Part shown: positions 554-28,974 of the stretch, piece after piece | How positions within the stretch are numbered: position 1 is the stretch's first letter | How the letters are laid out: every line of letters starts with the position of its first letter | IMG/VR virus record: IMGVR_UViG_3300009093_000035 | Span: 124,001-188,000 of that record | DNA: 64,000 nucleotides | Reading direction: 5' to 3' (one strand) | Notes under the pieces: model-generated | The model's database searches: none | Told to the model about the DNA's origin: nothing | Seen by the model: only the letters and a program-made list of their open reading frames with translations | Program-made: the position numbers and the translations under genes

Positions 554-1807
554 TCAGAGCTTCTTCATGACGTCGGTCCACTCTTCGAGGGACTTCCGGT
601 TCCGACCCACATCGGCCTCCGTAGCGGGCTGGACCACTCCGTTGATCGTGAATCCGGAGCTGCCGTTGGCGTTCGCCTCCAGGAGCTTCTCGTAGAGTTT
701 CACCTTCATCGGGACGAACTTCTTCAAGATCGTCGTGTCCGCTCCGGGGAAGTCCGAGAGGAACTCCGACATCTGAGCCGCCTCGGAATACTCCCCGAGG
801 CCGGTCCACTGAACGTGGCCCTTCTCGTCGAGGTACATCGCTCCGGCGAACTTCAGGTAGGTCGAAGCCTTCGGCTTGTTCCAGCGGCCCGTCTTCGGGT
901 CCATCGTCTGGGAGAGGAAACGGTAGCCCTTCCCGGAGTTGAACTCCAGCCAGAACTTCGCCTGGGTTCGGAGCTTGAACCCGTAGGGGTAGTCGTCGAC
1001 CACATAGGCCGAGTTCGGATCAGTGTGGCCGTAGAGGGGCTTCTTCGTCGAGGCCTTCTTCTCGAACTTCCCGCCCTTGGACTCGATCTTCTTCCGATCC
1101 GCGTCGGTGAGCCGATCCTTCTTGGCCTTGGAGTCCATCATCTCCTGCCACTCGGCTTCGTCTTCGTTCTTCGCCGGTCGCCAGGCGATCACTTCCTTCT
1201 CGGAAGCGGCGTGGTTCGACGGCATCCAGAGATCGTTCTCCTTCGCCGCGAACTCCTCCAGCTTCTGGAGGAACTTCATGTCCGCATCATCGAGAGCCTC
1301 GTAGGCCTCGTCGAGCGTCTTGTACTTCTCGTCGAAGTAGTCCCCCACCATCGCCAAGAACTTCTTCTCCACGTCGGACTCGGCGCCCTTCATGTGGTTC
1401 TTGATCCCCTTGATCATGCTCTGAGTCATGATCCCGCCCGTCTTCGAGAGGAGGGGGAGGAGAAGGGGGCGAAGCTCGGGCTTCTCGTGAGCGAGCCGAA
1501 TCGTAGCTGAACGGAGGTTGGTCATGGCTCGCTTCTCGTTGGGATGTTCTCGGAGATACCGCTCGCGAATAGAGGGATTCTCCCACTGAGGGAAGATGAA
1601 CTCCATCCCCTCCTGCTCGTAGGGAACGCGATTCTTCTTCAGCCAAGCGACGAACAGGTTGGCGGTGCCCCTGGTCCCCCACTCGACTACCGCCCGCGAA
1701 TCGTTCGCCTGGGGATTGCGCGTCGAGTAACTTGAGTTGCCGAACGTGTTCTCATCGTCCGCATCTCTCATCGCTCTGACGAGATCTTCGAATTCGTGGA
1801 AAGCCAT
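554..1807 (-). CDS. Multi-module protein with an internal LRSATIRLAHEKPELR tag; putative head cargo
   Basis: 417 aa. Internal Met at 1525 begins the tag. Modules are separated by KRA/KTG/KKAS motifs. C-terminal domain reads YVVDDYPYGF...WNKPKASTY. Confidence 0.75.
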   Translation of the reverse strand: MAFHEFEDLVRAMRDADDENTFGNSSYSTRNPQANDSRAVVEWGTRGTANLFVAWLKKNRVPYEQEGMEFIFPQWENPSIRERYLREHPNEKRAMTNLRSATIRLAHEKPELRPLLLPLLSKTGGIMTQSMIKGIKNHMKGAESDVEKKFLAMVGDYFDEKYKTLDEAYEALDDADMKFLQKLEEFAAKENDLWMPSNHAASEKEVIAWRPAKNEDEAEWQEMMDSKAKKDRLTDADRKKIESKGGKFEKKASTKKPLYGHTDPNSAYVVDDYPYGFKLRTQAKFWLEFNSGKGYRFLSQTMDPKTGRWNKPKASTYLKFAGAMYLDEKGHVQWTGLGEYSEAAQMSEFLSDFPGADTTILKKFVPMKVKLYEKLLEANANGSSGFTINGVVQPATEADVGRNRKSLEEWTDVMKKL

Positions 1808-1808
1808 C

Positions 1809-2447
1809 TCACTCCACCACGATCACGACGGAAAGATCGCGGACGACGGGGACCGCCCCGTACACCGCGAGCTTCGGCTTCACCTTCTTCAGGAGGGCGC
1901 TGAAATACGCCTCGTGGACTCTCTGGTCGAGGTGGCTGACCTTCTTCTTGTAGGCCCAATCGGTGTACGGGAAAGTGAGGTCGAACCAGTACTGAGCCTG
2001 ACCATCCTCGACCTTGAAGGACGAGTAGGAGGACCTCTTCGGGAGGATCGAGAGAGCCTCCCGAACGATGCGCTTGTCTTCCTCGGGACCGGCCGCGACG
2101 CGACCGAGAGCCTTCTCTCGCCGCTCTTGGGCTTGCTGGGGAGTGAGACCGATCGCCTTCGCTGCCTGACGGATCGCCTCTGACCAGGTCTTCCCGTAGT
2201 AGCCTTCGACCCCGAGCCCGCCCGCCGAACTGGCGCGAGTGACTCCGCGTCGAGACTTCCAGATCGAAGCTGTCCACTCCGGTCCGAGGAGGATCTTCAC
2301 GAGCTTGTCGACGGTTCGAGCCGACTGGCGATCGAGGATCGCCTCTTCGGCCTCAGCAGCAGCCTTCGCCAACAACGGCAGAAGATGCTCCCGAAGCTCG
2401 GGCTTCTCGTGGGCGAGTCGGATCGTGGCTGAGCGGAGGGATGCCAT
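1809..2447 (-). CDS. Hypothetical protein with an N-terminal LRSATIRLAHEKPELR tag; putative head cargo
   Basis: 212 aa, SD-like AGGGAG before the ATG, preceded by CGGT-N7-CTAT. Confidence 0.8.
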   Translation of the reverse strand: MASLRSATIRLAHEKPELREHLLPLLAKAAAEAEEAILDRQSARTVDKLVKILLGPEWTASIWKSRRGVTRASSAGGLGVEGYYGKTWSEAIRQAAKAIGLTPQQAQERREKALGRVAAGPEEDKRIVREALSILPKRSSYSSFKVEDGQAQYWFDLTFPYTDWAYKKKVSHLDQRVHEAYFSALLKKVKPKLAVYGAVPVVRDLSVVIVVE

Positions 2448-2462
2448 CTCCCTGAACCGGAA

Positions 2463-2477
2463 ATAGCTATCCCACCG
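2463..2477 (-). promoter_or_regulatory. Putative late promoter motif CGGT-N7-CTAT
   Basis: 15 nt upstream of the ATG at 2447; same pattern recurs at 7 other gene starts. Confidence 0.55.
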
Positions 2478-3636
2478 ACCGGGCTCGGATCTCGGTGGAA
2501 CTGATGTCCCAAGATCCCGGAAGGCGAGTCCAAACGCTGAGCGCCTCCAAAGACACGAGACCCGACGGGGCCAGCTCTTTCGAGCGCTTCTGGGAGACCT
2601 CGTCGATCGTGAGGAGCTTCCCGTCCACGATCCGGTTGGCGACGTAGAACCGACACCCGAGCTTCGAGAACTCGGTGATCATGTCCAGAACGCCGTCTCG
2701 ACCCTCCCCGTACCACTTCGGATCGAGCATCCGATCCATCGCGTCCGTTCCGATCACGAAACCCGCGCCGGGGTACTTCCGAGCCTTGTCGAGGTAGAGC
2801 GCGTCGTCGTACCCGAAGAGGAGGTCCTTCCCCCGGAACTGAGGGATTCGAGCGAGAGCCTCCGACACCGAGATCGTCTCCTTATGAGGAGGCTTCATCG
2901 TGATGTAGTAGGTCGCCCGGAGACCCGAGACCTTCTCCGCCGCCTCGGCCATCCCGAAGTGGCCAAAGTGAACCGGGTTGAACGCCCCCGGCACCAGAAG
3001 AAGCCCCCTCCCGTCCTTCGGGGCTTCCGTCCGAGTCCCGTCGGCTCGGAAGTAGGGGAGGCTCAGGAAGGGGTGGAGGTCTTGCGTCACGTGGACGGCT
3101 CCGCCCTGATAGATCTCCGCATCCAGGGGCTTCCCGGTGTAGGAGAGCTTCGCGGCAGACATGATCATGTCCATCGCGAGATGTACCACGAACTCCTCGT
3201 CCTTCTGACGAGCTTCGTACCCCACCCCTTTCCGGATGATGACGGAAGTGTGGAAGGCCGGCTCGTCCTTCGTACGGACGGCCACGCATACGCGATGGTC
3301 CCCTCGGTGTTCCCGAGTCCCGGCCACCGAAGCCGTGATCCCGACTCCGATCGGAGCCCCAGCCCGCTTCGAAGAGAGAGCCTTCATGTACGAGACCGAG
3401 GCCATGTCCACCGCAACGGACTCGGCGACGTACTTCTCCGGGCGGTACCCAAGGAACTCCGCGGTCGCGTCCTGATCGTACGGGAAGGACCCTCCGACCA
3501 GCACGGAGGAGATTCCGGGGACCGCCCACAACAGGGCCTGGAGGCTCGCCCCGGCCCCCGTAGCGGCGACGTAGAGCCGCGTAGGAGGTCCCGCGATCAA
3601 CCGCTCGATCGCCTCACGTTCAGCGAGCGTAGGCAC
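2467..3636 (-). CDS. CinA/PncC-like domain fused to NMN/NaMN adenylyltransferase (NadD/NadM-like)
   Basis: N-terminal TGAG..PGISS..PY..GVGITAS resembles the CinA C-terminal fold. C-terminal PGAFNPVHFGH (HxGH) and DISSTEIR are nucleotidyltransferase motifs. Overlaps the end of NAMPT. Confidence 0.8.
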   Translation of the reverse strand: MPTLAEREAIERLIAGPPTRLYVAATGAGASLQALLWAVPGISSVLVGGSFPYDQDATAEFLGYRPEKYVAESVAVDMASVSYMKALSSKRAGAPIGVGITASVAGTREHRGDHRVCVAVRTKDEPAFHTSVIIRKGVGYEARQKDEEFVVHLAMDMIMSAAKLSYTGKPLDAEIYQGGAVHVTQDLHPFLSLPYFRADGTRTEAPKDGRGLLLVPGAFNPVHFGHFGMAEAAEKVSGLRATYYITMKPPHKETISVSEALARIPQFRGKDLLFGYDDALYLDKARKYPGAGFVIGTDAMDRMLDPKWYGEGRDGVLDMITEFSKLGCRFYVANRIVDGKLLTIDEVSQKRSKELAPSGLVSLEALSVWTRLPGSWDISSTEIRARSVG

Positions 3637-5029
3637 GAAGCGGCTCCAGTGCGTTCGCCCGGACGACGTCCAGCATGATGCCGGAGCCGACCTGCTTCCC
3701 GTTCTCGTAGACGACGTGGAGGAGGGATGGGGCGTCCGACGAGCCCTCGGGGACGGTCATCGGCCCCGTCGGTCCCATCACGAGATCGAGACGGCCGCGC
3801 TTCGAGCGCTTCCCCGGATCCGTGACCGGGTCCTTGTAGACGTCGACCCACTTCCCGTCGATCAGACCCGACGAGCACTTGAAGGCGAACTTCTGGGTGT
3901 CGCGATCGACCTTCTGGAGAAGAGCCCCGCCCATCCCGAATCCGACGTTCGAGGCCGAGAACTGCTTCGACTCCGCCTCGTCGAGGATCTCCCCGATCGA
4001 GTTGTAGTTGATCCCGTCGCCCTGGATGATGCCGTAGTAGGCCGGAAGGACCTTGTAGCCCTTCTTGTTCTTCACGAGCGTCAGCTTCTTGTCGAGGAGC
4101 TGGAGGCAGGTACGGACGACCTCCGGCGGAATCCCCGAGTCCGGACGGATCACCATCTTCGCTCCCGAGCGCGCGACGTCGGCATGGAGAAGATCGCCCC
4201 AGAGGTTCTCCACGACGTTGTAGAGGTCGTACGAGTCCGAGACGCAGGCGACGATCGTCCCCGGCTTCGCGAACTGCTTGATCATGTTCCGGTACGCCTC
4301 GACCTCCATCTCCCGCCCCCAGGACGTGATCGTGGAGTGTTCGGAGGCCGGAATCGAGAACGCGGCCATTCCCTCGGGAGTCCCGTAGTAATGGTTCGCG
4401 TAGCGAATCCCCTCGATCGTGTCGGAGCCCTTGAAGTTCACGAGGTGGCTCATCCCGCCGATCCCTGCGCTCTCTCGCGAAGAGACGCCGCGCGAACCGA
4501 AGTCATGTAGCTTGAAGTCGATCTCCCCGAGCGGGTCGTCCGACGACTTCAGGAGGTGACGGAAGATCTCCGCCTTGCAGTGCCAAGAGAGCGTCGAGAC
4601 CGTGATCGGGTACCAGAGACGCATCAGCATCGTCTCCAGCCATCCGACGACCCAGAAGGTCTCCGGGTCGGTGCTCTCGACCGTCACGAGAACGTTGTTC
4701 ACGGGAACGACCGTTCCTTCGCGAACAGCCTTGATCCGAACAGGGAAGTAGCCGAGGTCTCGGATCCGCTCCATCCCCTTCCTCGGGAACGGGACGCCGT
4801 GAAGACGACAGAACGTGTCCATCTCGTCGATGTCGGCCGTCGTGACGAGGGCCTGGAGGTACCGAACGATCAGGTACTGGAGACCGAAGAAGACCGTCCG
4901 ATCGAACATCCCTCCTCGCGACTCCAGATACGAGTACATCCCCGTCATCTTGGGCGGGTACTGGAGGAAGTGGGAGGTCTTGTAGCTGTCGACGTCGCCG
5001 ATCGGATTTTCGCGGAGGGGTTCGCTCAT
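3620..5029 (-). CDS. nadV: Nicotinamide phosphoribosyltransferase (NAMPT)
   Basis: DSYKTSH, LHDFGSRG, SIPASEHS, VSDSYD, IRPDSG, IQGDG, FGMGGALLQ, KDPVTDPGKRSKRG motifs. Confidence 0.96.
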   Translation of the reverse strand: MSEPLRENPIGDVDSYKTSHFLQYPPKMTGMYSYLESRGGMFDRTVFFGLQYLIVRYLQALVTTADIDEMDTFCRLHGVPFPRKGMERIRDLGYFPVRIKAVREGTVVPVNNVLVTVESTDPETFWVVGWLETMLMRLWYPITVSTLSWHCKAEIFRHLLKSSDDPLGEIDFKLHDFGSRGVSSRESAGIGGMSHLVNFKGSDTIEGIRYANHYYGTPEGMAAFSIPASEHSTITSWGREMEVEAYRNMIKQFAKPGTIVACVSDSYDLYNVVENLWGDLLHADVARSGAKMVIRPDSGIPPEVVRTCLQLLDKKLTLVKNKKGYKVLPAYYGIIQGDGINYNSIGEILDEAESKQFSASNVGFGMGGALLQKVDRDTQKFAFKCSSGLIDGKWVDVYKDPVTDPGKRSKRGRLDLVMGPTGPMTVPEGSSDAPSLLHVVYENGKQVGSGIMLDVVRANALEPLRAYAR

Positions 5030-5042
5030 GTTCTTGGTCCTG

Positions 5043-5474
5043 TTACTCTTCGGAGGTCGTGTGGAGGGCGTACCCGTCCGACACGTGGTCGAACAGTCGC
5101 TTGTTGTAGTCGTAGAAGCTGTTGGAAGGGTCGAGGAGATCCTTCCACTCGATCCACTTCACCGAGAGACCCGCTTCCTTCGAGAACGGCTCCCCCTCGA
5201 ACTCCGCGAGGTAGGTGATGGAGTCGTAGGTGACCTCGCCGGGACAGAGTCCGCGGAAGATCTTGCGGAGAGTTGTCACAACGACCCCCGTCTCCTCTTG
5301 GACCTCTCGGACGATGGCGTCCTCCGGACTTTCGCCCGTCTCCACCTTCCCGCCCGGGAGACCCATGTCCTCGGGCTTTCCTCGACGGGACACCCCGAGG
5401 ATGAAGCCGTCCTCACGAACGAGGAGGGCGCAGACTGCGAGCGGAACAGCGGGGAGGATCTGGTGGGTGGTCAT
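5043..5474 (-). CDS. Nudix hydrolase
   Basis: Nudix box GGKVETGESPEDAIVREVQEETG. Likely start is MTTHQ at 5474 rather than 5636. Confidence 0.9.
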   Translation of the reverse strand: MTTHQILPAVPLAVCALLVREDGFILGVSRRGKPEDMGLPGGKVETGESPEDAIVREVQEETGVVVTTLRKIFRGLCPGEVTYDSITYLAEFEGEPFSKEAGLSVKWIEWKDLLDPSNSFYDYNKRLFDHVSDGYALHTTSEE

Positions 5475-5772
5475 TCTGTCCGAGGTAACGACCGAGAGAA
5501 GGGTCGCTACACTCCTTACGCCCACTCGGGGCGAGCGATAACGCTCGATCGAGGCGCCGACGTCGCGGTTGCAAATTTTTCGTAACCTTTCTCGATCGAT
5601 CGACTTCGGAAGGATTTTCGGACACTTCCGAGCCAAAAATCGAATTCCAAAATTCGCTGCTGTAGTAGGCCCGGAATTAGCTAGCGGTAGGGGCTCCTGG
5701 GCTTAGATAGGCCCAGTTCCGGAGTTCCCCCCTGGACCTCTTGGTTAAGACCCTACTCACAAAGGACTATCC

Positions 5773-6057
5773 ATGACCCTCGATTCCGCTCGTGTGTCCC
5801 ACCCCTCGACCAACGACCAGAACGTCTCCACCCCCGCTCCGGTGAAGACGAGACCGCGGTCGAGGGAAGCGAAGACGCTCTCGTACCTGAAGAGGCTCCA
5901 CTCTCTCCAGGCGTCCTCCCACGACGTCGCCCGCTACCTCGATCTTCCGAGCCCCTGGGGCCCGGCTCAGGCGGTCGCTTCTCTGGAGAAGCTGATCCGC
6001 GAGAAGAAGGTGAAGAAGGTGAAGTCGGGCGGAGAGACGAGATACCTCGCTCGCTGA
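5773..6057 (+). CDS. Small basic protein, possible winged-helix DNA binder
   Basis: AAGGA SD; helix-turn-helix-like spacing followed by the wing-like KVKKVKSGGETRY. One of very few plus-strand genes. Confidence 0.55.
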   Translation: MTLDSARVSHPSTNDQNVSTPAPVKTRPRSREAKTLSYLKRLHSLQASSHDVARYLDLPSPWGPAQAVASLEKLIREKKVKKVKSGGETRYLAR

Positions 6058-6076
6058 TCCATTCGTCCGAGGGGGG

Positions 6077-6274
6077 CTACAACCTGAGTCCGGGGATCGC
6101 CCAGTCTAGCCATCTCCGGACAAAGAAGACGGGAACGCATACCTCGTCCCCGTACCCGCCGCCGGGTCCTACGACCAGACACCTCACCCCATACAGGTCT
6201 ATGTACGTCCCGGTCGGGATAGGGATCTCGTGGAGCGTCGTCGCGGCGTACCACCTTGCCGTTTCGTCATCCAT
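6077..6274 (-). CDS. Hypothetical protein
   Basis: 65 aa, overlaps the stop of the upstream minus-strand ORF. Confidence 0.45.
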   Translation of the reverse strand: MDDETARWYAATTLHEIPIPTGTYIDLYGVRCLVVGPGGGYGDEVCVPVFFVRRWLDWAIPGLRL

Positions 6275-6689
6275 CCAAGAACGCCTTCAGCCTCGCGAGG
6301 AAGCCTCGGTCCACTCCCGGCAGGTGTGAGCGGCAAGCTCGTCCGTAAGGTTGAGGCTTCTTCGGTAGAATGGGGGCGTTGTCTTCGGTCTTCGAGAGCT
6401 TCTTCGGCTTCTCTTTTTCGACCGGCGTGTGCCAGGCGATCTCGGCGTCGGCCCCACAGCAACAATGCTGGTCCGCCAAGAAGTCGGGATCCTTCGTGAT
6501 GATCAGAGAGGAAGACCCCTCGCCCGAGCGCCTCTGCTCGACCGTCCCGGTTTCCGGGTACGGTTCCGCCTGACGTCGGGCGAGGTCCTCAGCGTCTTTC
6601 TCCCAGGTCGAGGGATCTCCGAGGCGCGAAAGAGCTTCCTCTCGCGAGATCTTCCTTCCCTCCAGGTTGGGATCGAGCGGCTTCGTCAT
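6267..6689 (-). CDS. Hypothetical protein (CCCG...CRSH possible metal site)
   Basis: 140 aa; GGCGTAA motif 9 nt upstream. Confidence 0.6.
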   Translation of the reverse strand: MTKPLDPNLEGRKISREEALSRLGDPSTWEKDAEDLARRQAEPYPETGTVEQRRSGEGSSSLIITKDPDFLADQHCCCGADAEIAWHTPVEKEKPKKLSKTEDNAPILPKKPQPYGRACRSHLPGVDRGFLARLKAFLDG

Positions 6690-17662: not shown

Positions 17663-18847
17663 CTACAGGCCGAGCTTCGTCAACCGCTCTTCCGGAACGC
17701 CTGAAACGTCGAGGATGCCCCATACCGCCGCGGGACGAACACCACCGTCCGGCATGGAGGCGACCGCCCCGAGTCCCCCGAGGAAGCGCATCTGGAACTC
17801 CTGGCCCAGGTAGTCCCACTTGACCGGGACGGCGCTAACCTGCGAAGGAAAGTCGCTTGGATTCGGACCGCTCATGCCGGGACTACGTCGCTCCGGCTTG
17901 GACTCGTTCCTCATTCTCGCGAGCAACGCCGCGAGACGCTCTCCTTCGAGCATCCAGTTGCGCTTGAGGCCCACCTTGTAATCTCGCAGGAAGGGATAGA
18001 AGACCGCGACCCATCCGTTGACGAACGGGCCTCCGCTACCACCCCCCTCGGCGTAGAAGGAGCGCCAGAACTTGACGTCGATCGAGCCCGTCGCGGTCTC
18101 CACGAGCTTCTTGCAGACGCTCTGCAGCGGATCGAGCCACCAGGCGAGGTCTCCGAACTCCCGGAGGTTCTCGACGCGAGTGAGGATCGACTCCCAATCG
18201 CCCACCTCGCCTTCGAGGGTGATCTTCGGGAAGCCGCACATGGTCGTCATCCCGTAGTCGAAGTATTTCGACATCGCATCCATGAGGATGATCTCGCTGC
18301 AAGCCTTCTCCACGACCCCCGTCGTCGAGAAGTCGCACACGAGCAGGTCGCGCTTCTTACCGATGTACCCCTCGATCTGCCGAGAGAAGTCACCGAAGAG
18401 ACGCGTCCAGTCGTTGGAAGGAGACCCCTTCACGAAGTCGTGAGCCTCGACCTCGATGAACTGCTTACCCTCGAACTTCACGAACTGGTCTCGAAGCTCC
18501 TCCGCGTTCATCTTCACGTGCTGTGCGAAGCCGTGGGCGATCGCCATCCAGACGTGATCCGGCGAGAGACTCAGGGGAAGATGCAGGTTGTACGCGGCAC
18601 CGACCGCTCCGATCAGAGCGCTGGACGAAGACCAGCGATGTACGAGGAGATCCGATGCCCCCTCGACCCTCACGGTCGGTCGCTCCAGATCCGGACTCCG
18701 AAGCTCCGTAACTCTTCCGAGTCGGAGCCCGCCTTGAGGACGACCCTGGGTCTCGTACGTCTCCCGGAGCTTCGCCGCGTACGGGACGATCTCCAAGCGA
18801 CTGAGATCGTCCGGTTTCACGTCATCGAGTCGAAAGCTTTGAACCAT
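17663..18847 (-). CDS. DUF4419-family protein
   Basis: LSPDHVWMAI, DFSTT, MSKYFDY..MCGFPKITLEG..DW, GSGGPFVNGW motifs. Confidence 0.85.
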   Translation of the reverse strand: MVQSFRLDDVKPDDLSRLEIVPYAAKLRETYETQGRPQGGLRLGRVTELRSPDLERPTVRVEGASDLLVHRWSSSSALIGAVGAAYNLHLPLSLSPDHVWMAIAHGFAQHVKMNAEELRDQFVKFEGKQFIEVEAHDFVKGSPSNDWTRLFGDFSRQIEGYIGKKRDLLVCDFSTTGVVEKACSEIILMDAMSKYFDYGMTTMCGFPKITLEGEVGDWESILTRVENLREFGDLAWWLDPLQSVCKKLVETATGSIDVKFWRSFYAEGGGSGGPFVNGWVAVFYPFLRDYKVGLKRNWMLEGERLAALLARMRNESKPERRSPGMSGPNPSDFPSQVSAVPVKWDYLGQEFQMRFLGGLGAVASMPDGGVRPAAVWGILDVSGVPEERLTKLGL

Positions 18848-25737: not shown

Positions 25738-28700
25738 CTACCAATTCCACTCCAGGGACGAAGTCTTGTTGGAAGACCCCGTATCGATGTCCAAATCCAC
25801 CAAGTCCCCGATCGCATCCTGTACCTGGGACTCGTAAGGAGCCTTCTCTTCCGACTCGGACGAATCGCCCGGACCGGAGAAATCGGTGGGCTTCGACCTC
25901 GAAGGAGCCTTCTCCCGACGCATCTCGGTAAGAGGCTCTCTCTCGGAAGCCGCGTCTTCTACAGCTACGTTCGTGAGAAGCTCGGTGAAGACGTCGTGAG
26001 CGTTGCGGACGCGCTCCCGCTGAGACGCCTTCAATCCAGAGAAGGGCCAGACGTAGTCGGCCTCATCCTCAGAGTCTTCCCCGTCGTAGATCTTCCGCCA
26101 AGACGCCGCGAGCTTCCCGCTCGGGTCTACCGCCTCCAGCGCCTTCTCCATCTGCTCCGGTTGAAGCTTCCGGACCATGTCAGAGACGACTTCGGCAGAA
26201 GGCTCGGAACCGGGAACTCCCAACCCGGCCTCAATCATGTCGGAGACGTCTACACCGCTCTCCTTCAAAGACCGAAGCATCGTCCTCGTCCCCGTAGGAA
26301 TCGAAGACTCTGAGTCGTCGTCGCCCTCTAGGGCCGACGAAAGCTCCAAGGCTCGATGGTCGGCGGCGAGGTACCCCATCCGGTTCCGGAGCTGTTCCAG
26401 TTCCTTCTGGTCCGCCTCGCGCTCTTCGGGAGACTGGGGCGCTCCGCTGTTGGAGGAGAGCTTCTCTTCGAGGTCCGAGATCTTGTCCTGAGTATCCGTT
26501 CGAACCCGGGCGAAGGTCTTCTTCGTCTCAGCCCGATCGTCCGGAGACATCCCATCGAACCGCTCGACCGTCTTCGAGGTTCGCTCCTTCACCCCGGCCT
26601 TATCGATCGGAGACGAGGTGTCTCCGATGTAGGTCATCGGGTTACGGGCTGCCTCAGCCGTAGCCGCATGAACGAAGAACTTCGAGAAGCTCGACTGGAG
26701 TTCCTTCTCCACCTGGTCGCGCTTCTCGGTGAGCTGGAGGATCCGATCACCTTGGGTCTTCGCGAAGCTCCGCTTCAACCCCTCGATCTCGTCGTTGAGG
26801 TCTTCGTACTTCGACTTCAGCTTCTCGATCTTCTCTGGGGACGGGGGCTTCTTCGTCGAAGGGGAGTTCCCCGCGGCCATCCTACCGATCGCTTCGTCGC
26901 GATCTGCCGTCAGCTTCTCTACGAACTTCTCGGCGTCCTCGGTCGTCATCTGCTCGGTCAGAGAATCGAGCGTCGACTTCACGAAACGTGAGTCCTCCTT
27001 CGAGAAAGCCGGGGAGTCCTTCACGGACTGGGCCTTCTGATGGATCTCCGAGCGGCGGCGCTTATCCAGCTCCTCCGCCTCGTCCCTCTTGTACTGAGCC
27101 TCTTCCTCAGCGTCCGCGTCCTCTTGCTGCTTCTTCGGGTCGGGAGGCGCCTCCCCGGACTCAGGCTTCGGTTCTGGCTTTGGGGGCTTCGGAGGAAGGC
27201 CCTTCAGATCTCTCTTCCGGGCCTCTTCCTGCTCGCGCTTCTTCTTCCGAAGCTTGTCTTCCTTCGAGCCCTCTTCTTCGAACTCCTTCGCCTTCTCGGC
27301 CCACTCGGCGCGGATCCGCTTCTGTTCCTCGTCCGGGAGACTCTGGAACTTCACGTCTTTGTTGGTCTCTTTGTTGTGGAAGGTCTTCCCCTCCACGGAC
27401 TCCAGGAATTCGTCATCCTCTTCTGAGTCCAAGGCCAACAAGTACCGAGAGGCCACGCGACTCGGGGCCGTCATGAAGTAGGCCATCGCTACTCGAAGGG
27501 CGACCTTCTTGTAGTTCAGGGAGAGATCGTCGTCGGTGGCGTCGAGGTCCTTGTCCCCCGAGTCCACCCGGTGGTTCTGGAGATCTTTCCGAGGGGGCTT
27601 CTTCTTCGGCTCCGGCTTCAGAAGAGCTTCCGTCGCCTCGTCTTCCTTCTCTGCTTCGGTCTTCGTGGCGGACTTCGACTCCTTGAAGGAAGAGAGGATC
27701 GTCCCATCCTTCATGAAGGCGTCTTCGAGACCGGGGACCAGGTAGTCCGAACGAAGGGTCGCCTTCTCGTGGCCGACGATGTCCGCGACCTCTTCGAGGG
27801 CGTCCGCGAACTCCTTCTTCAGGATCTTGTCCCGCTCCTTCCGAGCGCGTGGGAGATCCGGGCCCTCTTTCCGCTGTTCGCGGAGGGCCTTGCACATCTC
27901 CTGATTCGCTCGGAGCCCGCGGATGTCCTTCGCGGTGATGTCGAACTCGCTGAGGTAGTCGTTCACCGCCTCCGGCTTCACCGTGTAGTCGTCCCGGCTG
28001 AGCAGGCAATCGTCGCCCTTCTTCCCCTCAGCCAGCTCCTTCAGGAGCTTCACGACCGGAGCCGACTCGACCACCTTCTCGTGCTTCACGCCGGACTTTC
28101 CGACGTACTTCAGGGTCGCTTTCGACCCAGAGAACGAGATGTGCTTCTTACGCCACCCCGTCACCCCGTAGTGGCCTTCTTCGGCCGACCCCTCATTCCC
28201 TACCCGCTCGCACGTCTCGTCCATCAGAGCGGCGGCGAGGGCGGGGAGAGCTACCTTCGGGTCCTTCGAAGAGATGTCCTTCTTGATCATCTTCCGAAGG
28301 TCGCTGAGGTCCTTCCGAAGACGTTCGATCCGTTCGGCCTTCTCCGAGTGCCGGTTCGCTACCTGGCGATCGCTGTACTCGTAGTGGACATTCCCCTCGT
28401 CGTCCTTCGTCTTGGACTTGTACCGAGCCGCTACGACAACGGCCGAGGCCAGTCTCGCGGAAAGGGGCGGGGGACAATCGACGTCATGACGAGCGACCGT
28501 AACCAGGTGGGGGACGCAAGACCTACCGTTCGACTCGATCCAGTCGGCGAACGTGCGTAGGTGGCCCAGGCGGTCTTCCCAGATCGCCACGCCTCGGATC
28601 GAAGGCTGCTTCGAGAGGATCTTCTTGATCGTCTCCAGCTTGAATCTCTCGGTATCCGTGTCTCCGGGGGACAGGTAGATCTCCTGGAAGTCGAGACCGG

Positions 28701-28974
28701 CCTGGCGAAGGAGCTGACGGATCCGAAGCGAGAACTTCTGGACTCGACCCGTGAGAAGGATCGTCCGAACCTCTACGTTCTCCAACGACTGCTTCGCGCG
28801 CTCGACGACCGATTCGTTCCACCAATCGATCGTGGGCTCCTCCGGCACGCAAGGCGTCGAGAGGGAGTTGAGGTCGCCCCACCACTCCGCCCCTTCTTTC
28901 CACCAGATGGGAGGCTCCGGACTCTTGAAGAGAGTCCCATCGAAGTCGTAGACGTGAAGCTTGATAGGCCTCAT
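25738..28974 (-). CDS. Fusion of HAD phosphatase (Swiss-army-knife RNA-repair type), DNA topoisomerase IB core and a long acidic helical region
   Basis: HAD: YDFDGTLF, LLTGR, K, WEDR. TopIB pentad: ERVGNE, VGKSG, KDIRG, VGHE, RSDYL. Confidence 0.85.
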   Translation of the reverse strand: MRPIKLHVYDFDGTLFKSPEPPIWWKEGAEWWGDLNSLSTPCVPEEPTIDWWNESVVERAKQSLENVEVRTILLTGRVQKFSLRIRQLLRQAGLDFQEIYLSPGDTDTERFKLETIKKILSKQPSIRGVAIWEDRLGHLRTFADWIESNGRSCVPHLVTVARHDVDCPPPLSARLASAVVVAARYKSKTKDDEGNVHYEYSDRQVANRHSEKAERIERLRKDLSDLRKMIKKDISSKDPKVALPALAAALMDETCERVGNEGSAEEGHYGVTGWRKKHISFSGSKATLKYVGKSGVKHEKVVESAPVVKLLKELAEGKKGDDCLLSRDDYTVKPEAVNDYLSEFDITAKDIRGLRANQEMCKALREQRKEGPDLPRARKERDKILKKEFADALEEVADIVGHEKATLRSDYLVPGLEDAFMKDGTILSSFKESKSATKTEAEKEDEATEALLKPEPKKKPPRKDLQNHRVDSGDKDLDATDDDLSLNYKKVALRVAMAYFMTAPSRVASRYLLALDSEEDDEFLESVEGKTFHNKETNKDVKFQSLPDEEQKRIRAEWAEKAKEFEEEGSKEDKLRKKKREQEEARKRDLKGLPPKPPKPEPKPESGEAPPDPKKQQEDADAEEEAQYKRDEAEELDKRRRSEIHQKAQSVKDSPAFSKEDSRFVKSTLDSLTEQMTTEDAEKFVEKLTADRDEAIGRMAAGNSPSTKKPPSPEKIEKLKSKYEDLNDEIEGLKRSFAKTQGDRILQLTEKRDQVEKELQSSFSKFFVHAATAEAARNPMTYIGDTSSPIDKAGVKERTSKTVERFDGMSPDDRAETKKTFARVRTDTQDKISDLEEKLSSNSGAPQSPEEREADQKELEQLRNRMGYLAADHRALELSSALEGDDDSESSIPTGTRTMLRSLKESGVDVSDMIEAGLGVPGSEPSAEVVSDMVRKLQPEQMEKALEAVDPSGKLAASWRKIYDGEDSEDEADYVWPFSGLKASQRERVRNAHDVFTELLTNVAVEDAASEREPLTEMRREKAPSRSKPTDFSGPGDSSESEEKAPYESQVQDAIGDLVDLDIDTGSSNKTSSLEWNW

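What the first reader, a model, noticed from the sequence alone, without database searches (positions are those of the whole stretch)
2467..5474. NAD+ rebuilding operon with an atypical CinA-fused adenylyltransferase
Seen: Nudix, NAMPT and CinA-like::HxGH adenylyltransferase in one run. Known: phage NAMPT plus NMN adenylyltransferase (KVP40 NadV/NatV; the NARP2 pathway) regenerates NAD+ and can counter NAD-depleting defences such as Thoeris and SIR2 systems. The CinA/PncC-like domain appears to lack the catalytic Ser of AES(C)TGG (it reads VAATGAG) and the Lys after Y (YDQDAT). Inference: a non-catalytic NMN-binding or channelling domain; the separate Nudix may recycle ADP-ribose. The phage also encodes an ART-like domain that would consume NAD+.
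Basis: partly seen in the sequence, partly recalled or inferred. Interest (0 to 1): 0.66.

Follow-up and report, generated by a model that had tools for sequence, protein, structure and literature searches.

The report
Huge-phage NAD+ salvage operon, PncC-like::NadD-like fusion
A very large soil phage carries three adjacent genes for rebuilding the cofactor NAD+ from nicotinamide, and its last enzyme has a fused copy of a bacterial NMN-deamidase domain that lacks the catalytic lysine and has Thr for the catalytic serine but keeps its nucleotide-binding pocket, an arrangement common in huge phages but not described in the papers searched.

Summary
The three genes are real and lie on the minus strand: Nudix (5043-5474), NAMPT (3620-5029) and a 389-aa fusion (2467-3636). 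The fusion has an N-terminal CinA/PncC fold (Z 18.9 to 2A9S) and a C-terminal NadD-type adenylyltransferase with HxGH, PPHK and ISSTxxR intact.

The window belongs to a roughly 470-kb rhizosphere phage. The fusion is not a one-off. It defines a large family (at least 213 clusters at E<=1e-30), found mostly on 150-512 kb viral contigs and rarely in the cellular genomes sampled. NAMPT is present in 20 of 29 fusion-bearing viral records.

Across 246 members the PncC catalytic Lys is never present. The Ser position holds Thr, Ser or Ala. The phosphate-binding Gly/Ser/Tyr/Arg are about 100% conserved, and a new H-R-G-D-H-R motif appears. The N-domain is at least as conserved as the adenylyltransferase domain.

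Best reading: a NARP2-like nicotinamide-to-NAD+ route that uses a different adenylyltransferase from KVP40 NatV, joined to a deamidase-dead, ligand-binding PncC derivative. What that domain does is inferred, not shown. NadD genes in jumbo phages are already reported; the fused domain is not mentioned in the papers searched. This is a new variant of a known kind.

The parts
5043..5474 (-). Nudix hydrolase, 143 aa, starting at ATG 5474; Nudix box at residues 42-64
   Evidence: PF00293 at E 3.6e-17. Box located. 46% identical to the N-terminal Nudix domain of the triple fusions P0006 and P0008, which also fixes the start codon. 30% identical to the KVP40 NatV Nudix domain, E 9e-10. The closest solved structures are MutT-like.
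3620..5029 (-). Nicotinamide phosphoribosyltransferase (NadV/NAMPT type), 469 aa
   Evidence: PF04095 plus PF18127. phrog_448 at 2.3e-145. NF006629 at 568 bits against a cut-off of 405. SEHST motif at 229-233. 47-55% identical to NAMPTs of cultured jumbo phages.
2467..3636 (-). 389-aa fusion protein, PncC/CinA-like domain joined to a NadD-type adenylyltransferase; GTG start at 3636, stop at 2467-2469
   Evidence: AF2 model has pLDDT 92.2 and pTM 0.90. Start supported by homologue P0002 and by GGAG at 3644-3647.
3142..3636 (-). N-terminal CinA/PncC-fold domain, residues 1-165. Thr26 sits at the PncC Ser position and Thr58 at the Lys position. Conserved G41, S43, Y53, T101, H110, H114, K136, R143, D146.
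   Evidence: VIA-align Z 18.9, rmsd 2.2 A over 153 aa to 2A9S. Foldseek TM 0.71. HMM alignments. Column statistics.
3010..3141 (-). Inter-domain segment, residues 166-209, containing the conserved motif YFRADGTR (195-202)
   Evidence: P194, F196, G200 and R202 are invariant or nearly so. pLDDT falls to 65-75 only over residues 170-190.
2470..3009 (-). NadD-type nucleotidyltransferase domain, residues 210-389: HFGH 223-226, PPHK 249-252, DPKW 305-308, ISSTEIR 378-384
   Evidence: PDB sequence hits to NadD 3hfj and 2qtr. VIA Z 11.4 to 2h29, against only 6.2 for NadR. HMM alignment to E. coli NadD. These motifs are about 100% conserved in 246 homologues.
3620..3647 (-). NAMPT/fusion junction: 17-nt overlap (3620-3636) and a GGAG ribosome-binding site (3644-3647) inside the NAMPT 3' end
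   Evidence: Read directly from the sequence.

Best explanation
The three co-oriented, tightly packed genes form an NAD+ salvage module of a roughly 470-kb rhizosphere phage.

Proposed steps:
1. NAMPT converts nicotinamide plus PRPP to NMN.
2. The C-terminal NadD-type domain of the fusion adenylylates the mononucleotide with ATP. NMN would give NAD+. The domain may also accept NaMN, giving NaAD.
3. The Nudix enzyme, homologous to the Nudix half of NadM/NatV, hydrolyses an NAD-related dinucleotide. ADP-ribose is the likeliest substrate.

The N-terminal domain descends from the NMN deamidase PncC. It has lost the Ser/Lys chemistry but keeps the pocket that holds the ribose 5-phosphate of a pyridine mononucleotide. 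That pocket now carries a new set of invariant basic and His residues. Most likely the domain binds NMN or a related nucleotide for the attached adenylyltransferase, either capturing substrate in hosts that have an active PncC or regulating the enzyme.

Shown by homology: gene identities, folds, motifs, family-wide residue patterns and gene linkage. Inferred: substrates, the role of the N-domain, and the anti-defence function.
For: Gene identities.

Folds: N-domain Z 18.9 to AtCinA 2A9S; C-domain Z 11.4 to NadD. The AF2 model has pLDDT 92.2 and pTM 0.90.

Catalytic motifs of the adenylyltransferase (H223, H226, H251, K252, S379, S380, R384) are about 100% conserved in 246 homologues.

PncC residues, with their roles taken from mutagenesis in PMC5384747 and the TtCinA complex in PMC4246079:
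- The Lys equivalent (position 58) is T/Q/L/M/I/V/S and never K, in 246 of 246.
- The Ser equivalent (position 26) is T 213, S 19, A 12. The Ala cases include the close relatives P0004, P0005 and P0009, which are otherwise intact.
- The phosphate binders G41, S43, Y53 and R143 are conserved in 245-246 of 246, and T101 in 212.

The N-domain is at least as constrained as the C-domain: 45.9% against 43.2% mean pairwise identity, and 26 of 148 against 20 of 180 columns at 90% or more.

Linkage:
- NAMPT lies within 5 kb in 16 of 29 viral loci and somewhere in the record in 20 of 29.
- The Nudix-NAMPT-fusion order is kept in relatives L078 and L079.
- Nudix::CinA-like::NadD-like triple fusions exist, with a Nudix 46% identical to the window's.
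- The window's Nudix is 30% identical to the NatV Nudix.

Canonical PncC was found in 41 of 41 sampled genomes of one bacterial phylum, so NMN deamidation by likely hosts is plausible.

Phage NAMPT plus NMNAT restores NAD+ and overcomes Thoeris, DSR and SIR2-HerA (bioRxiv 10.1101/2024.02.11.579819).
Against: - No biochemistry exists for any member of this family.
- The C-domain belongs to the NadD branch, whose bacterial members usually prefer NaMN (my own knowledge). No specificity determinant could be read from the alignment.
- NadE occurs in 5 of 29 fusion-bearing records. In G001 and G003 it occurs without NAMPT, which fits a deamido route.
- The invariant H110, H114, K136 and D146 could form a new active site rather than a passive pocket.
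- The register at the Ser position differs between HMMER and hhalign.
- The NAMPT-fusion co-fold gave no answer.
- Anti-defence is inferred from other phages. The module may simply feed phage NAD+ consumers.
Confidence: 0.6

Rival explanations
1. The N-domain is still an NMN amidohydrolase working by a rewired mechanism, for example Thr26 or water activated by K136, H110 or H114. The fusion would then carry out two consecutive steps of the pyridine nucleotide cycle, NMN to NaMN to NaAD, and NadE (phage or host) would finish NAD+.
For: The domain order mirrors the reaction order. The C-domain is NadD-type. NadE is encoded in 5 of 29 fusion-bearing viral records and in 3 of 7 near-complete ones. 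It lies next to NAMPT in G002 and G005 and is present without NAMPT in G001 and G003. A hydroxyl residue (Thr or Ser) fills the nucleophile position in 232 of 246. The oxyanion Gly27 and Thr101 are conserved, and there are invariant His, Lys and Asp residues of unknown role.
Against: The Lys is described as absolutely conserved in active PncC, and K63A and S31A are dead in AtCinA. No member has Lys at that column, and 12 of 246, including otherwise intact close relatives, have Ala at the Ser column. Four DTR-complete genomes have NAMPT plus the fusion and no NadE. N-domain residues do not differ between phages with and without NadE. Deamidating the NMN just made by NAMPT would cost an extra ATP-dependent amidation.
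Confidence: 0.15
2. The N-domain has a new function on a different ribose-5-phosphate nucleotide, for example binding or cleaving ADP-ribose, NAD(P) or an ADPR-derived immune signal, or binding pyrophosphate. The fusion would then combine NAD+ synthesis with a second counter-defence or regulatory activity.
For: The family has a specific invariant cluster, H110-R111-G112-x-H114-R115 plus K136 and D146, which E. coli PncC lacks at the aligned loop. The extra basic residues suggest a more highly phosphorylated ligand. The CinA fold also hosts the non-deamidase binder HcgF (Z 10.8). The N-domain is under strong constraint.
Against: This is purely inferential. No ligand was modelled, no homologue has a known activity of this kind, and the domain is almost always tied to the adenylyltransferase. 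That tie argues for a role in the same reaction.
Confidence: 0.13
3. The module is metabolic housekeeping for a huge phage. It keeps NAD+ up for phage NAD+-consuming enzymes and long infections, and is not a dedicated counter-defence against NAD+-depleting immunity.
For: Jumbo phages have been reported to carry NAMPT, nadD, nadE, nadR and nadM as independent NAD+ synthesis and utilisation systems (PMC11662467). The operon sits beside a large replication and repair block. KVP40 NARP2 raises NAD+ even without a defence system.
Against: The same enzymatic route was shown to defeat Thoeris, DSR and SIR2-HerA. The two roles are not exclusive.
Confidence: 0.3
4. The N-domain is only a structural or dimerisation scaffold inherited from an ancestral PncC::NadD fusion and binds no ligand.
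For: PncC is a dimer with a composite site. Pseudoenzyme domains often persist as scaffolds.
Against: The conserved residues are exactly those that hold the ligand phosphate in PncC (G41, S43, Y53, R143 at about 100%), together with new invariant polar residues. A scaffold would not need these. Conservation is at least as high as in the catalytic domain.
Confidence: 0.07

Closest known systems
NARP2 of Vibrio phage KVP40 (NadV NAMPT plus NatV NMNAT-Nudix)
   Same: A NAMPT of the NadV type is encoded with a HxGH adenylyltransferase and a Nudix hydrolase. The window's Nudix is 30% identical to the NatV Nudix domain. The expected chemistry is nicotinamide to NMN to NAD+.
   Different: The adenylyltransferase is NadD-type rather than NadM-type, with no significant pairwise similarity to NatV beyond HxGH (E 0.30). 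The Nudix is a separate gene here, and in relatives it is fused at the N-terminus rather than the C-terminus. There is an extra PncC-like domain that NatV lacks.
Bacterial NMN deamidase PncC/CinA (E. coli PncC, A. tumefaciens 2A9S, T. thermophilus CinA)
   Same: Same fold (Z 18.9, rmsd 2.2 A over 153 aa). The Pfam CinA match is over the gathering score. The phosphate-binding Gly/Ser/Tyr/Arg and the Thr105 equivalent are conserved.
   Different: The catalytic Lys is absent in every member. The catalytic Ser is replaced by Thr, and in the family by Ser or Ala as well. The conserved Glu of the AES motif is lost. A new HRGxHR loop appears. TIGR00199 scores 15.1 bits against a cut-off of 68.9. The domain is fused to an adenylyltransferase rather than to a MocF/COG1058 domain.
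Bacterial NadD (NaMN adenylyltransferase) and the nadD genes reported in jumbo phages (PMC11662467)
   Same: HxGH, PPH(K/R), the stacking Trp and the ISxTxxR motif all align with E. coli NadD. The best structural matches are NadD and eukaryotic NMNATs. NAMPT-plus-nadD and pncB-nadD-nadE clusters in jumbo phages are already described.
   Different: Only 17-22% identity to solved NadDs. The protein falls below all NCBIfam NadD cut-offs (29.9 bits against 112.45). It carries a roughly 200-aa N-terminal PncC-like domain plus linker, which that paper does not mention (0 occurrences of CinA or PncC).
Inactive PncC paralogues (E. coli YdeJ and YfaY) and HcgF
   Same: These are CinA-fold proteins without NMN deamidase activity (PMC3855486). 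HcgF is a CinA-fold binder of a pyridinol nucleotide and matches the model at Z 10.8.
   Different: Different conserved residues. None is fused to an adenylyltransferase, and none is linked to phage NAD+ salvage.

Membership tests
NARP2 (phage NAMPT plus NMNAT NAD+ reconstitution pathway) | NAMPT of the NadV/Nampt clade, not paired with an Adps (Prs-like) gene | tested here: met
   PF04095 plus PF18127 and NF006629 at 568 bits against 405. No PF13793 Prs/Adps-like gene in the 248-kb record, which is only 56% complete.
NARP2 (phage NAMPT plus NMNAT NAD+ reconstitution pathway) | Nmnat homologous to KVP40 NatV, as the pathway was defined by MMseqs2 search with NatV | tested here: not met
   BLASTP of the fusion against NatV gives E 0.30, with only the HxGH segment aligned. 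The enzyme is NadD-type. It is analogous, not orthologous.
NARP2 (phage NAMPT plus NMNAT NAD+ reconstitution pathway) | Produces NAD+ from nicotinamide, PRPP and ATP and rescues phage from NAD+-depleting defence | not testable with these tools
   Needs enzyme assays and infection assays.
PncC/CinA NMN deamidase | CinA fold and a Pfam PF02464 match | tested here: met
   37.3 bits against a cut-off of 23.5. Z 18.9 to 2A9S.
PncC/CinA NMN deamidase | Catalytic Ser (At S31, Ec S29) | tested here: not met
   Thr26 by two HMMER alignments, or a deletion by hhalign. Family column: T 213, S 19, A 12.
PncC/CinA NMN deamidase | Catalytic Lys (At K63, Ec K61) | tested here: not met
   Thr58 here. 0 of 246 members have Lys.
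PncC/CinA NMN deamidase | Phosphate and ribose binding residues (At G46, S48, Y58, T105, R145) | tested here: met
   G41, S43, Y53 and R143 are conserved in 245-246 of 246, and T101 in 212 of 246. Equivalence in the second half of the domain rests on hhalign and motif alignment only.
PncC/CinA NMN deamidase | NCBIfam PncC_domain (TIGR00199) score over its cut-off | tested here: not met
   15.1 bits against 68.9.
NadD / NMNAT nucleotidyltransferase (HIGH superfamily) | HxGH and SxxxxR (ISSTxxR) ATP-binding motifs on a Rossmann-like fold | tested here: met
   HFGH at 223-226 and ISSTEIR at 378-384. Invariant in 246 homologues. Z 11.4 to NadD 2h29.
NadD / NMNAT nucleotidyltransferase (HIGH superfamily) | NCBIfam NadD equivalog score over its cut-off | tested here: not met
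   TIGR00482 scores 29.9 bits against 112.45. This is a divergent branch.
NadD / NMNAT nucleotidyltransferase (HIGH superfamily) | Substrate preference, NMN against NaMN | tested here: inconclusive
   W308 aligns with the stacking Trp117 of E. coli NadD, but the neighbouring specificity position varies (G, C or Y). Linkage to NAMPT argues for NMN. NadE in some genomes argues that NaMN is also used.
Nudix hydrolase, ADP-ribose pyrophosphatase type as in NadM-Nudix | Nudix box GX5EX7REUXEEXGU | tested here: met
   Residues 42-64. PF00293 at E 3.6e-17.
Nudix hydrolase, ADP-ribose pyrophosphatase type as in NadM-Nudix | Specific relationship to ADPR pyrophosphatase Nudix domains | tested here: inconclusive
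   30% identity to the NatV Nudix domain, E 9e-10, and weak hits to NadM-Nudix NCBIfam models. However, the best PDB and NCBIfam matches are MutT-like.

The most novel reading that the evidence does not exclude
The PncC-derived domain is a pseudoenzyme that huge phages have repurposed as an NMN trap. It would capture the NMN made by NAMPT or released by NAD+-dependent ligase, shield it from the host's own PncC deamidase, and hand it to the fused adenylyltransferase. This would make a third, structurally distinct class of phage NAD+-reconstitution enzyme. A bolder version, which the evidence also does not exclude, is that its new His/Arg/Lys/Asp pocket binds or destroys an ADPR-derived immune signal, so one protein would both silence the signal and rebuild NAD+.
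Probability: 0.3. Interest if true: 0.7.

Novelty: new variant of a known kind. Interest (0 to 1): 0.55.

Why it matters
NAD+ depletion is a common end-point of bacterial immunity (Thoeris, DSR, SIR2-HerA and others). Phage NAD+ reconstitution (NARP1-3) is a recently recognised general escape route.

This locus shows that huge environmental phages use a different adenylyltransferase from the experimentally studied KVP40 (NadM-type) and NARP3 (NadR-type) enzymes. It is permanently joined to a deamidase-derived domain whose catalytic residues are gone but whose ligand pocket is under strong selection.

The NatV-seeded search that defined NARP2 would probably miss this family, so the prevalence of phage NAD+ rebuilding is probably underestimated.

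The domain is also a clean test case for how a pseudoenzyme can be used for substrate capture or regulation in a virus-host metabolic conflict, and a possible source of NMN-binding parts for engineering.

Tried and rejected
- Co-folding NAMPT with the fusion to test channelling returned 'no answer' (score 0.00). This is not evidence either way.
- PHROGs has no family for the fusion at E<=0.01.
- The sigma-70 promoter and terminator scan of 1700-6300 found nothing above shuffled controls.
- The ART-like domain was not found with PF03496 in the phage record, nor in the 20 largest window ORFs. This was not exhaustive.
- Reading NMN or NaMN preference from an HMM alignment to E. coli NadD was uninformative.
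- The cyanobacterial NMNAT-C (PMC13036487) was checked as a possible CinA-like NMNAT. Its HxGH is at residues 16-19, so it is not this architecture.
- I recalled that yeast POF1 and plant homologues might share the CinA-like plus NMNAT architecture. I could not test this, because no sequence was available through the tools. It remains an untested lead.
- hhalign in global mode disagreed with HMMER on the Ser register. I prefer the ungapped register because the spacing from the end of strand 1 to the PG-S motif is identical (15 residues) in both proteins.
- The 495-aa gene upstream of triple fusion P0008 is not a NAMPT.
- Read laying was not used. Only DNA contig runs hold the stretch.


Full report
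**What is there**

The window is GC-rich (about 61%). It is part of an IMG/VR virus record of 248,579 bp that CheckV rates 56% complete. The same fusion protein lies on a 472,929-bp ENA contig. The stretch occurs in three rhizosphere metagenome runs. Around it lies a huge-phage replication and repair block: RecA, a RecD2-like helicase, a clamp loader, class II RNR, SbcCD-like genes and a topoisomerase IB fusion.

At 2467-5474, three minus-strand ORFs have the high GC3 of real genes:

| Gene | Coordinates | Length | Key evidence |
|---|---|---|---|
| Nudix | 5043-5474 | 143 aa | PF00293 at E 3.6e-17; start at ATG 5474 |
| NAMPT | 3620-5029 | 469 aa | PF04095 and PF18127; NF006629 at 568 bits against a cut-off of 405; phrog_448 |
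| Fusion | 2467-3636 | 389 aa | Pfam CinA over residues 18-128; CTP_transf_like over 214-386 |

NAMPT and the fusion overlap by 17 nt, and a GGAG sits 7 nt upstream of the fusion's GTG start. The next gene follows after 19 nt.

**The fusion protein**

An AlphaFold2 model built on 35 homologues is confident (pLDDT 92.2, pTM 0.90).

- Residues 1-165 superpose on the A. tumefaciens NMN deamidase 2A9S at Z 18.9 (rmsd 2.2 A over 153 residues). They also match T. thermophilus and S. mutans CinA at Z 17.4 (Foldseek).
- Residues 210-389 match bacterial NadD and eukaryotic NMNATs at Z 11.0-11.4. NadR scores only 6.2, and no NadM appears in the top 50.
- By sequence the C-domain hits only NadD structures. 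It aligns with E. coli NadD at the HxGH, PPH(K/R), Trp117 and ISxTxxR blocks.
- It has no significant similarity to KVP40 NatV beyond HxGH (E 0.30).

So the adenylyltransferase belongs to a different branch from the phage enzymes studied so far. The surveys I read list only NadM-Nudix and NadR for phages (PMC9503650; NARP3 in PMC13464706).

**Is the CinA-like domain a deamidase?**

Mutagenesis of AtCinA shows that S31A, K63A, Y58A and R145A are inactive. G46, S48, Y58 and R145 hold the phosphate, and T105 and G106 shape the amide site (PMC5384747). In TtCinA the Lys is described as absolutely conserved (PMC4246079).

Two HMMER alignments of the family profile, one to 2A9S and one to E. coli PncC, run ungapped through the first half of the domain. 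They give the following pairs:

| PncC residue (At/Ec) | Role | Window residue |
|---|---|---|
| S31/S29 | catalytic Ser | Thr26 |
| C32/C30 | oxyanion backbone | Gly27 |
| G46/G44 | phosphate | Gly41 |
| S48/S46 | phosphate | Ser43 |
| Y58/Y56 | phosphate | Tyr53 |
| K63/K61 | catalytic Lys | Thr58 |

A profile-profile alignment against 31 genuine PncC domains (probability 95%) agrees on every pair except the first. It adds T101 with S103(Ec) and R143 with R142(Ec).

I prefer the ungapped register. The distance from the end of strand 1 to the PG-S motif is 15 residues in both proteins. On either register there is no Ser in this protein.

Across 246 full-length family members:
- The Lys column is T 138, Q 46, L 22, M 12, I 8, V 7, S 7, and never Lys.
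- The Ser column is T 213, S 19, A 12. The Ala cases include the close and otherwise intact relatives P0004, P0005 and P0009.
- G27, G41, S43, Y53 and R143 are conserved in 245-246 of 246.
- A family-specific set is almost invariant: W37, H110, R111, H114, R115, K136 and D146.

The N-domain is at least as conserved as the catalytic C-domain. Mean pairwise identity is 45.9% against 43.2%, and 26 of 148 against 20 of 180 columns are at least 90% conserved.

The pattern is therefore: binding residues kept, canonical catalytic dyad gone, new polar residues fixed. That points to a functional domain that is not a PncC-type deamidase. It does not prove the domain is non-catalytic.

**How common, and where**

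- The word-indexed search found more than 400 homologues. The best 120 are nearly all 340-420 aa and cover about 95% of the query.
- An exhaustive profile search with the N-domain alone found 2,517 clusters at 50% identity with E<=1e-3, and 213 with E<=1e-30. The top 150 are almost all fusion-length, with the domain at the N-terminus.
- In IMG/VR, 29 full-length loci were recovered, mostly on contigs of 150-512 kb. Four of these are complete genomes with terminal repeats.
- INPHARED holds only two hits, both uncultured huge phages.
- PHROGs has no matching family.
- A pattern scan of 185,579 species genomes gave only two fusion-like hits, both in MAGs.
- A profile search of 802 genomes from two phyla gave one hit, a stand-alone 186-aa homologue.

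The fusion is thus typical of huge phages, not an oddity of this genome.

**Pathway context**

- NAMPT lies within 5 kb of the fusion in 16 of 29 viral loci. It is present in 20 of 29 records and in 5 of 7 near-complete ones.
- The Nudix-NAMPT-fusion order recurs in relatives L079 and L078, the latter with one inserted gene.
- Two relatives encode Nudix::CinA-like::NadD-like triple fusions. Their Nudix is 46% identical to the window's, a Rosetta-stone link that also fixes the Nudix start.
- The window's Nudix is 30% identical to the NatV Nudix domain (E 9e-10). Its closest solved structures are MutT-like, so its substrate remains open.
- NadE (PF02540) occurs in 5 of 29 records. It sits directly after NAMPT in G002 and G005, and it occurs without NAMPT in G001 and G003. 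Four complete genomes have NAMPT plus the fusion and no NadE.
- N-domain residues do not differ between phages with and without NadE.

This suggests the adenylyltransferase can serve both amidated and deamidated routes. It keeps alive the rival in which the N-domain still deamidates NMN.

**Comparison with the literature**

NARP2 (KVP40 NadV plus NatV) rebuilds NAD+ and defeats Thoeris, DSR and SIR2-HerA. It was catalogued by searching with NatV (bioRxiv 10.1101/2024.02.11.579819), a search that would probably miss this NadD-type family.

A 2024 metagenomic study already reports NAMPT, nadD, nadE and pncB clusters in jumbo phages across ecosystems. It never mentions CinA or PncC (PMC11662467).

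So NAD+ salvage with a NadD-like gene in huge phages is known at annotation level. The following appear undescribed in the papers I could search:
- the obligate PncC-derived domain;
- the family-wide loss of its catalytic Lys, with the Ser position variable;
- the new conserved HRGxHR motif;
- the Nudix triple fusions.

**Verdict**

- The NAD+ rebuilding module is well supported by homology and linkage.
- The claim that the domain is non-catalytic and binds NMN is the best-supported reading but is not shown.
- Channelling is untested; the co-fold gave no answer.
- The ART-like domain was not found.

I rate this a new variant of a known kind, with moderate interest.

Noticed in passing
window 1809-2447 (-) and 554-1807 (-): The two ORFs immediately downstream of the fusion (212 and 417 aa) share a near-identical segment, LRSATIRLAHEKPELR..LLPLL. 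Neither has a Pfam or PHROG match. A 418-aa gene holds the same position in relative L078.
   Followed up: partly
window 25738-28974 (-): A 1078-aa protein combines an N-terminal HAD_SAK_1 domain (of the 'Swiss Army Knife' RNA-repair type) with a eukaryotic-type topoisomerase IB catalytic core. About 670 C-terminal residues have no annotation.
   Followed up: no
window 17663-18847 (-): A strong DUF4419 match (240 bits) in a 394-aa phage protein of unknown role.
   Followed up: no
G002:C1:90453-92505 and G005:C1:95224-97283; also G001 and G003: Related huge phages encode an NAD synthetase (NadE) directly after NAMPT. Two near-complete genomes have the fusion plus NadE but no NAMPT. This suggests the family's adenylyltransferase also serves a deamido (NaAD) route.
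   Followed up: partly
homologues P0021, P0042, P0091 (C-terminus); P0002 (linker): Some family members carry a C-terminal PF09720 'Unstab_antitox' segment. P0002 has a roughly 30-aa CxxC...CxxC insert between the two domains.
   Followed up: no
L076 (G144:C1:4139501-4139935): A stand-alone 186-aa bacterial homologue of the N-domain, with H110 replaced by Lys. It lies between a beta-keto acid cleavage enzyme gene and a metallophosphoesterase gene, so a cellular branch of this Lys-less CinA-like subfamily exists.
   Followed up: partly
window 5475-5772: A roughly 300-bp non-coding gap upstream of the Nudix gene, facing a divergent small ORF (5773-6057, +). It has no sigma-70-like promoter. This is probably the operon's own, phage-specific promoter region.
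   Followed up: partly
L077 (Myxococcus phage Mx1, OR576727.2 122081-131412): The cultured phage with the closest NAMPT (55% identity) has separate small genes nearby, annotated as phosphopantetheine adenylyltransferase, cytidylyltransferase and NMN adenylyltransferase. It has no CinA-like fusion.
   Followed up: no
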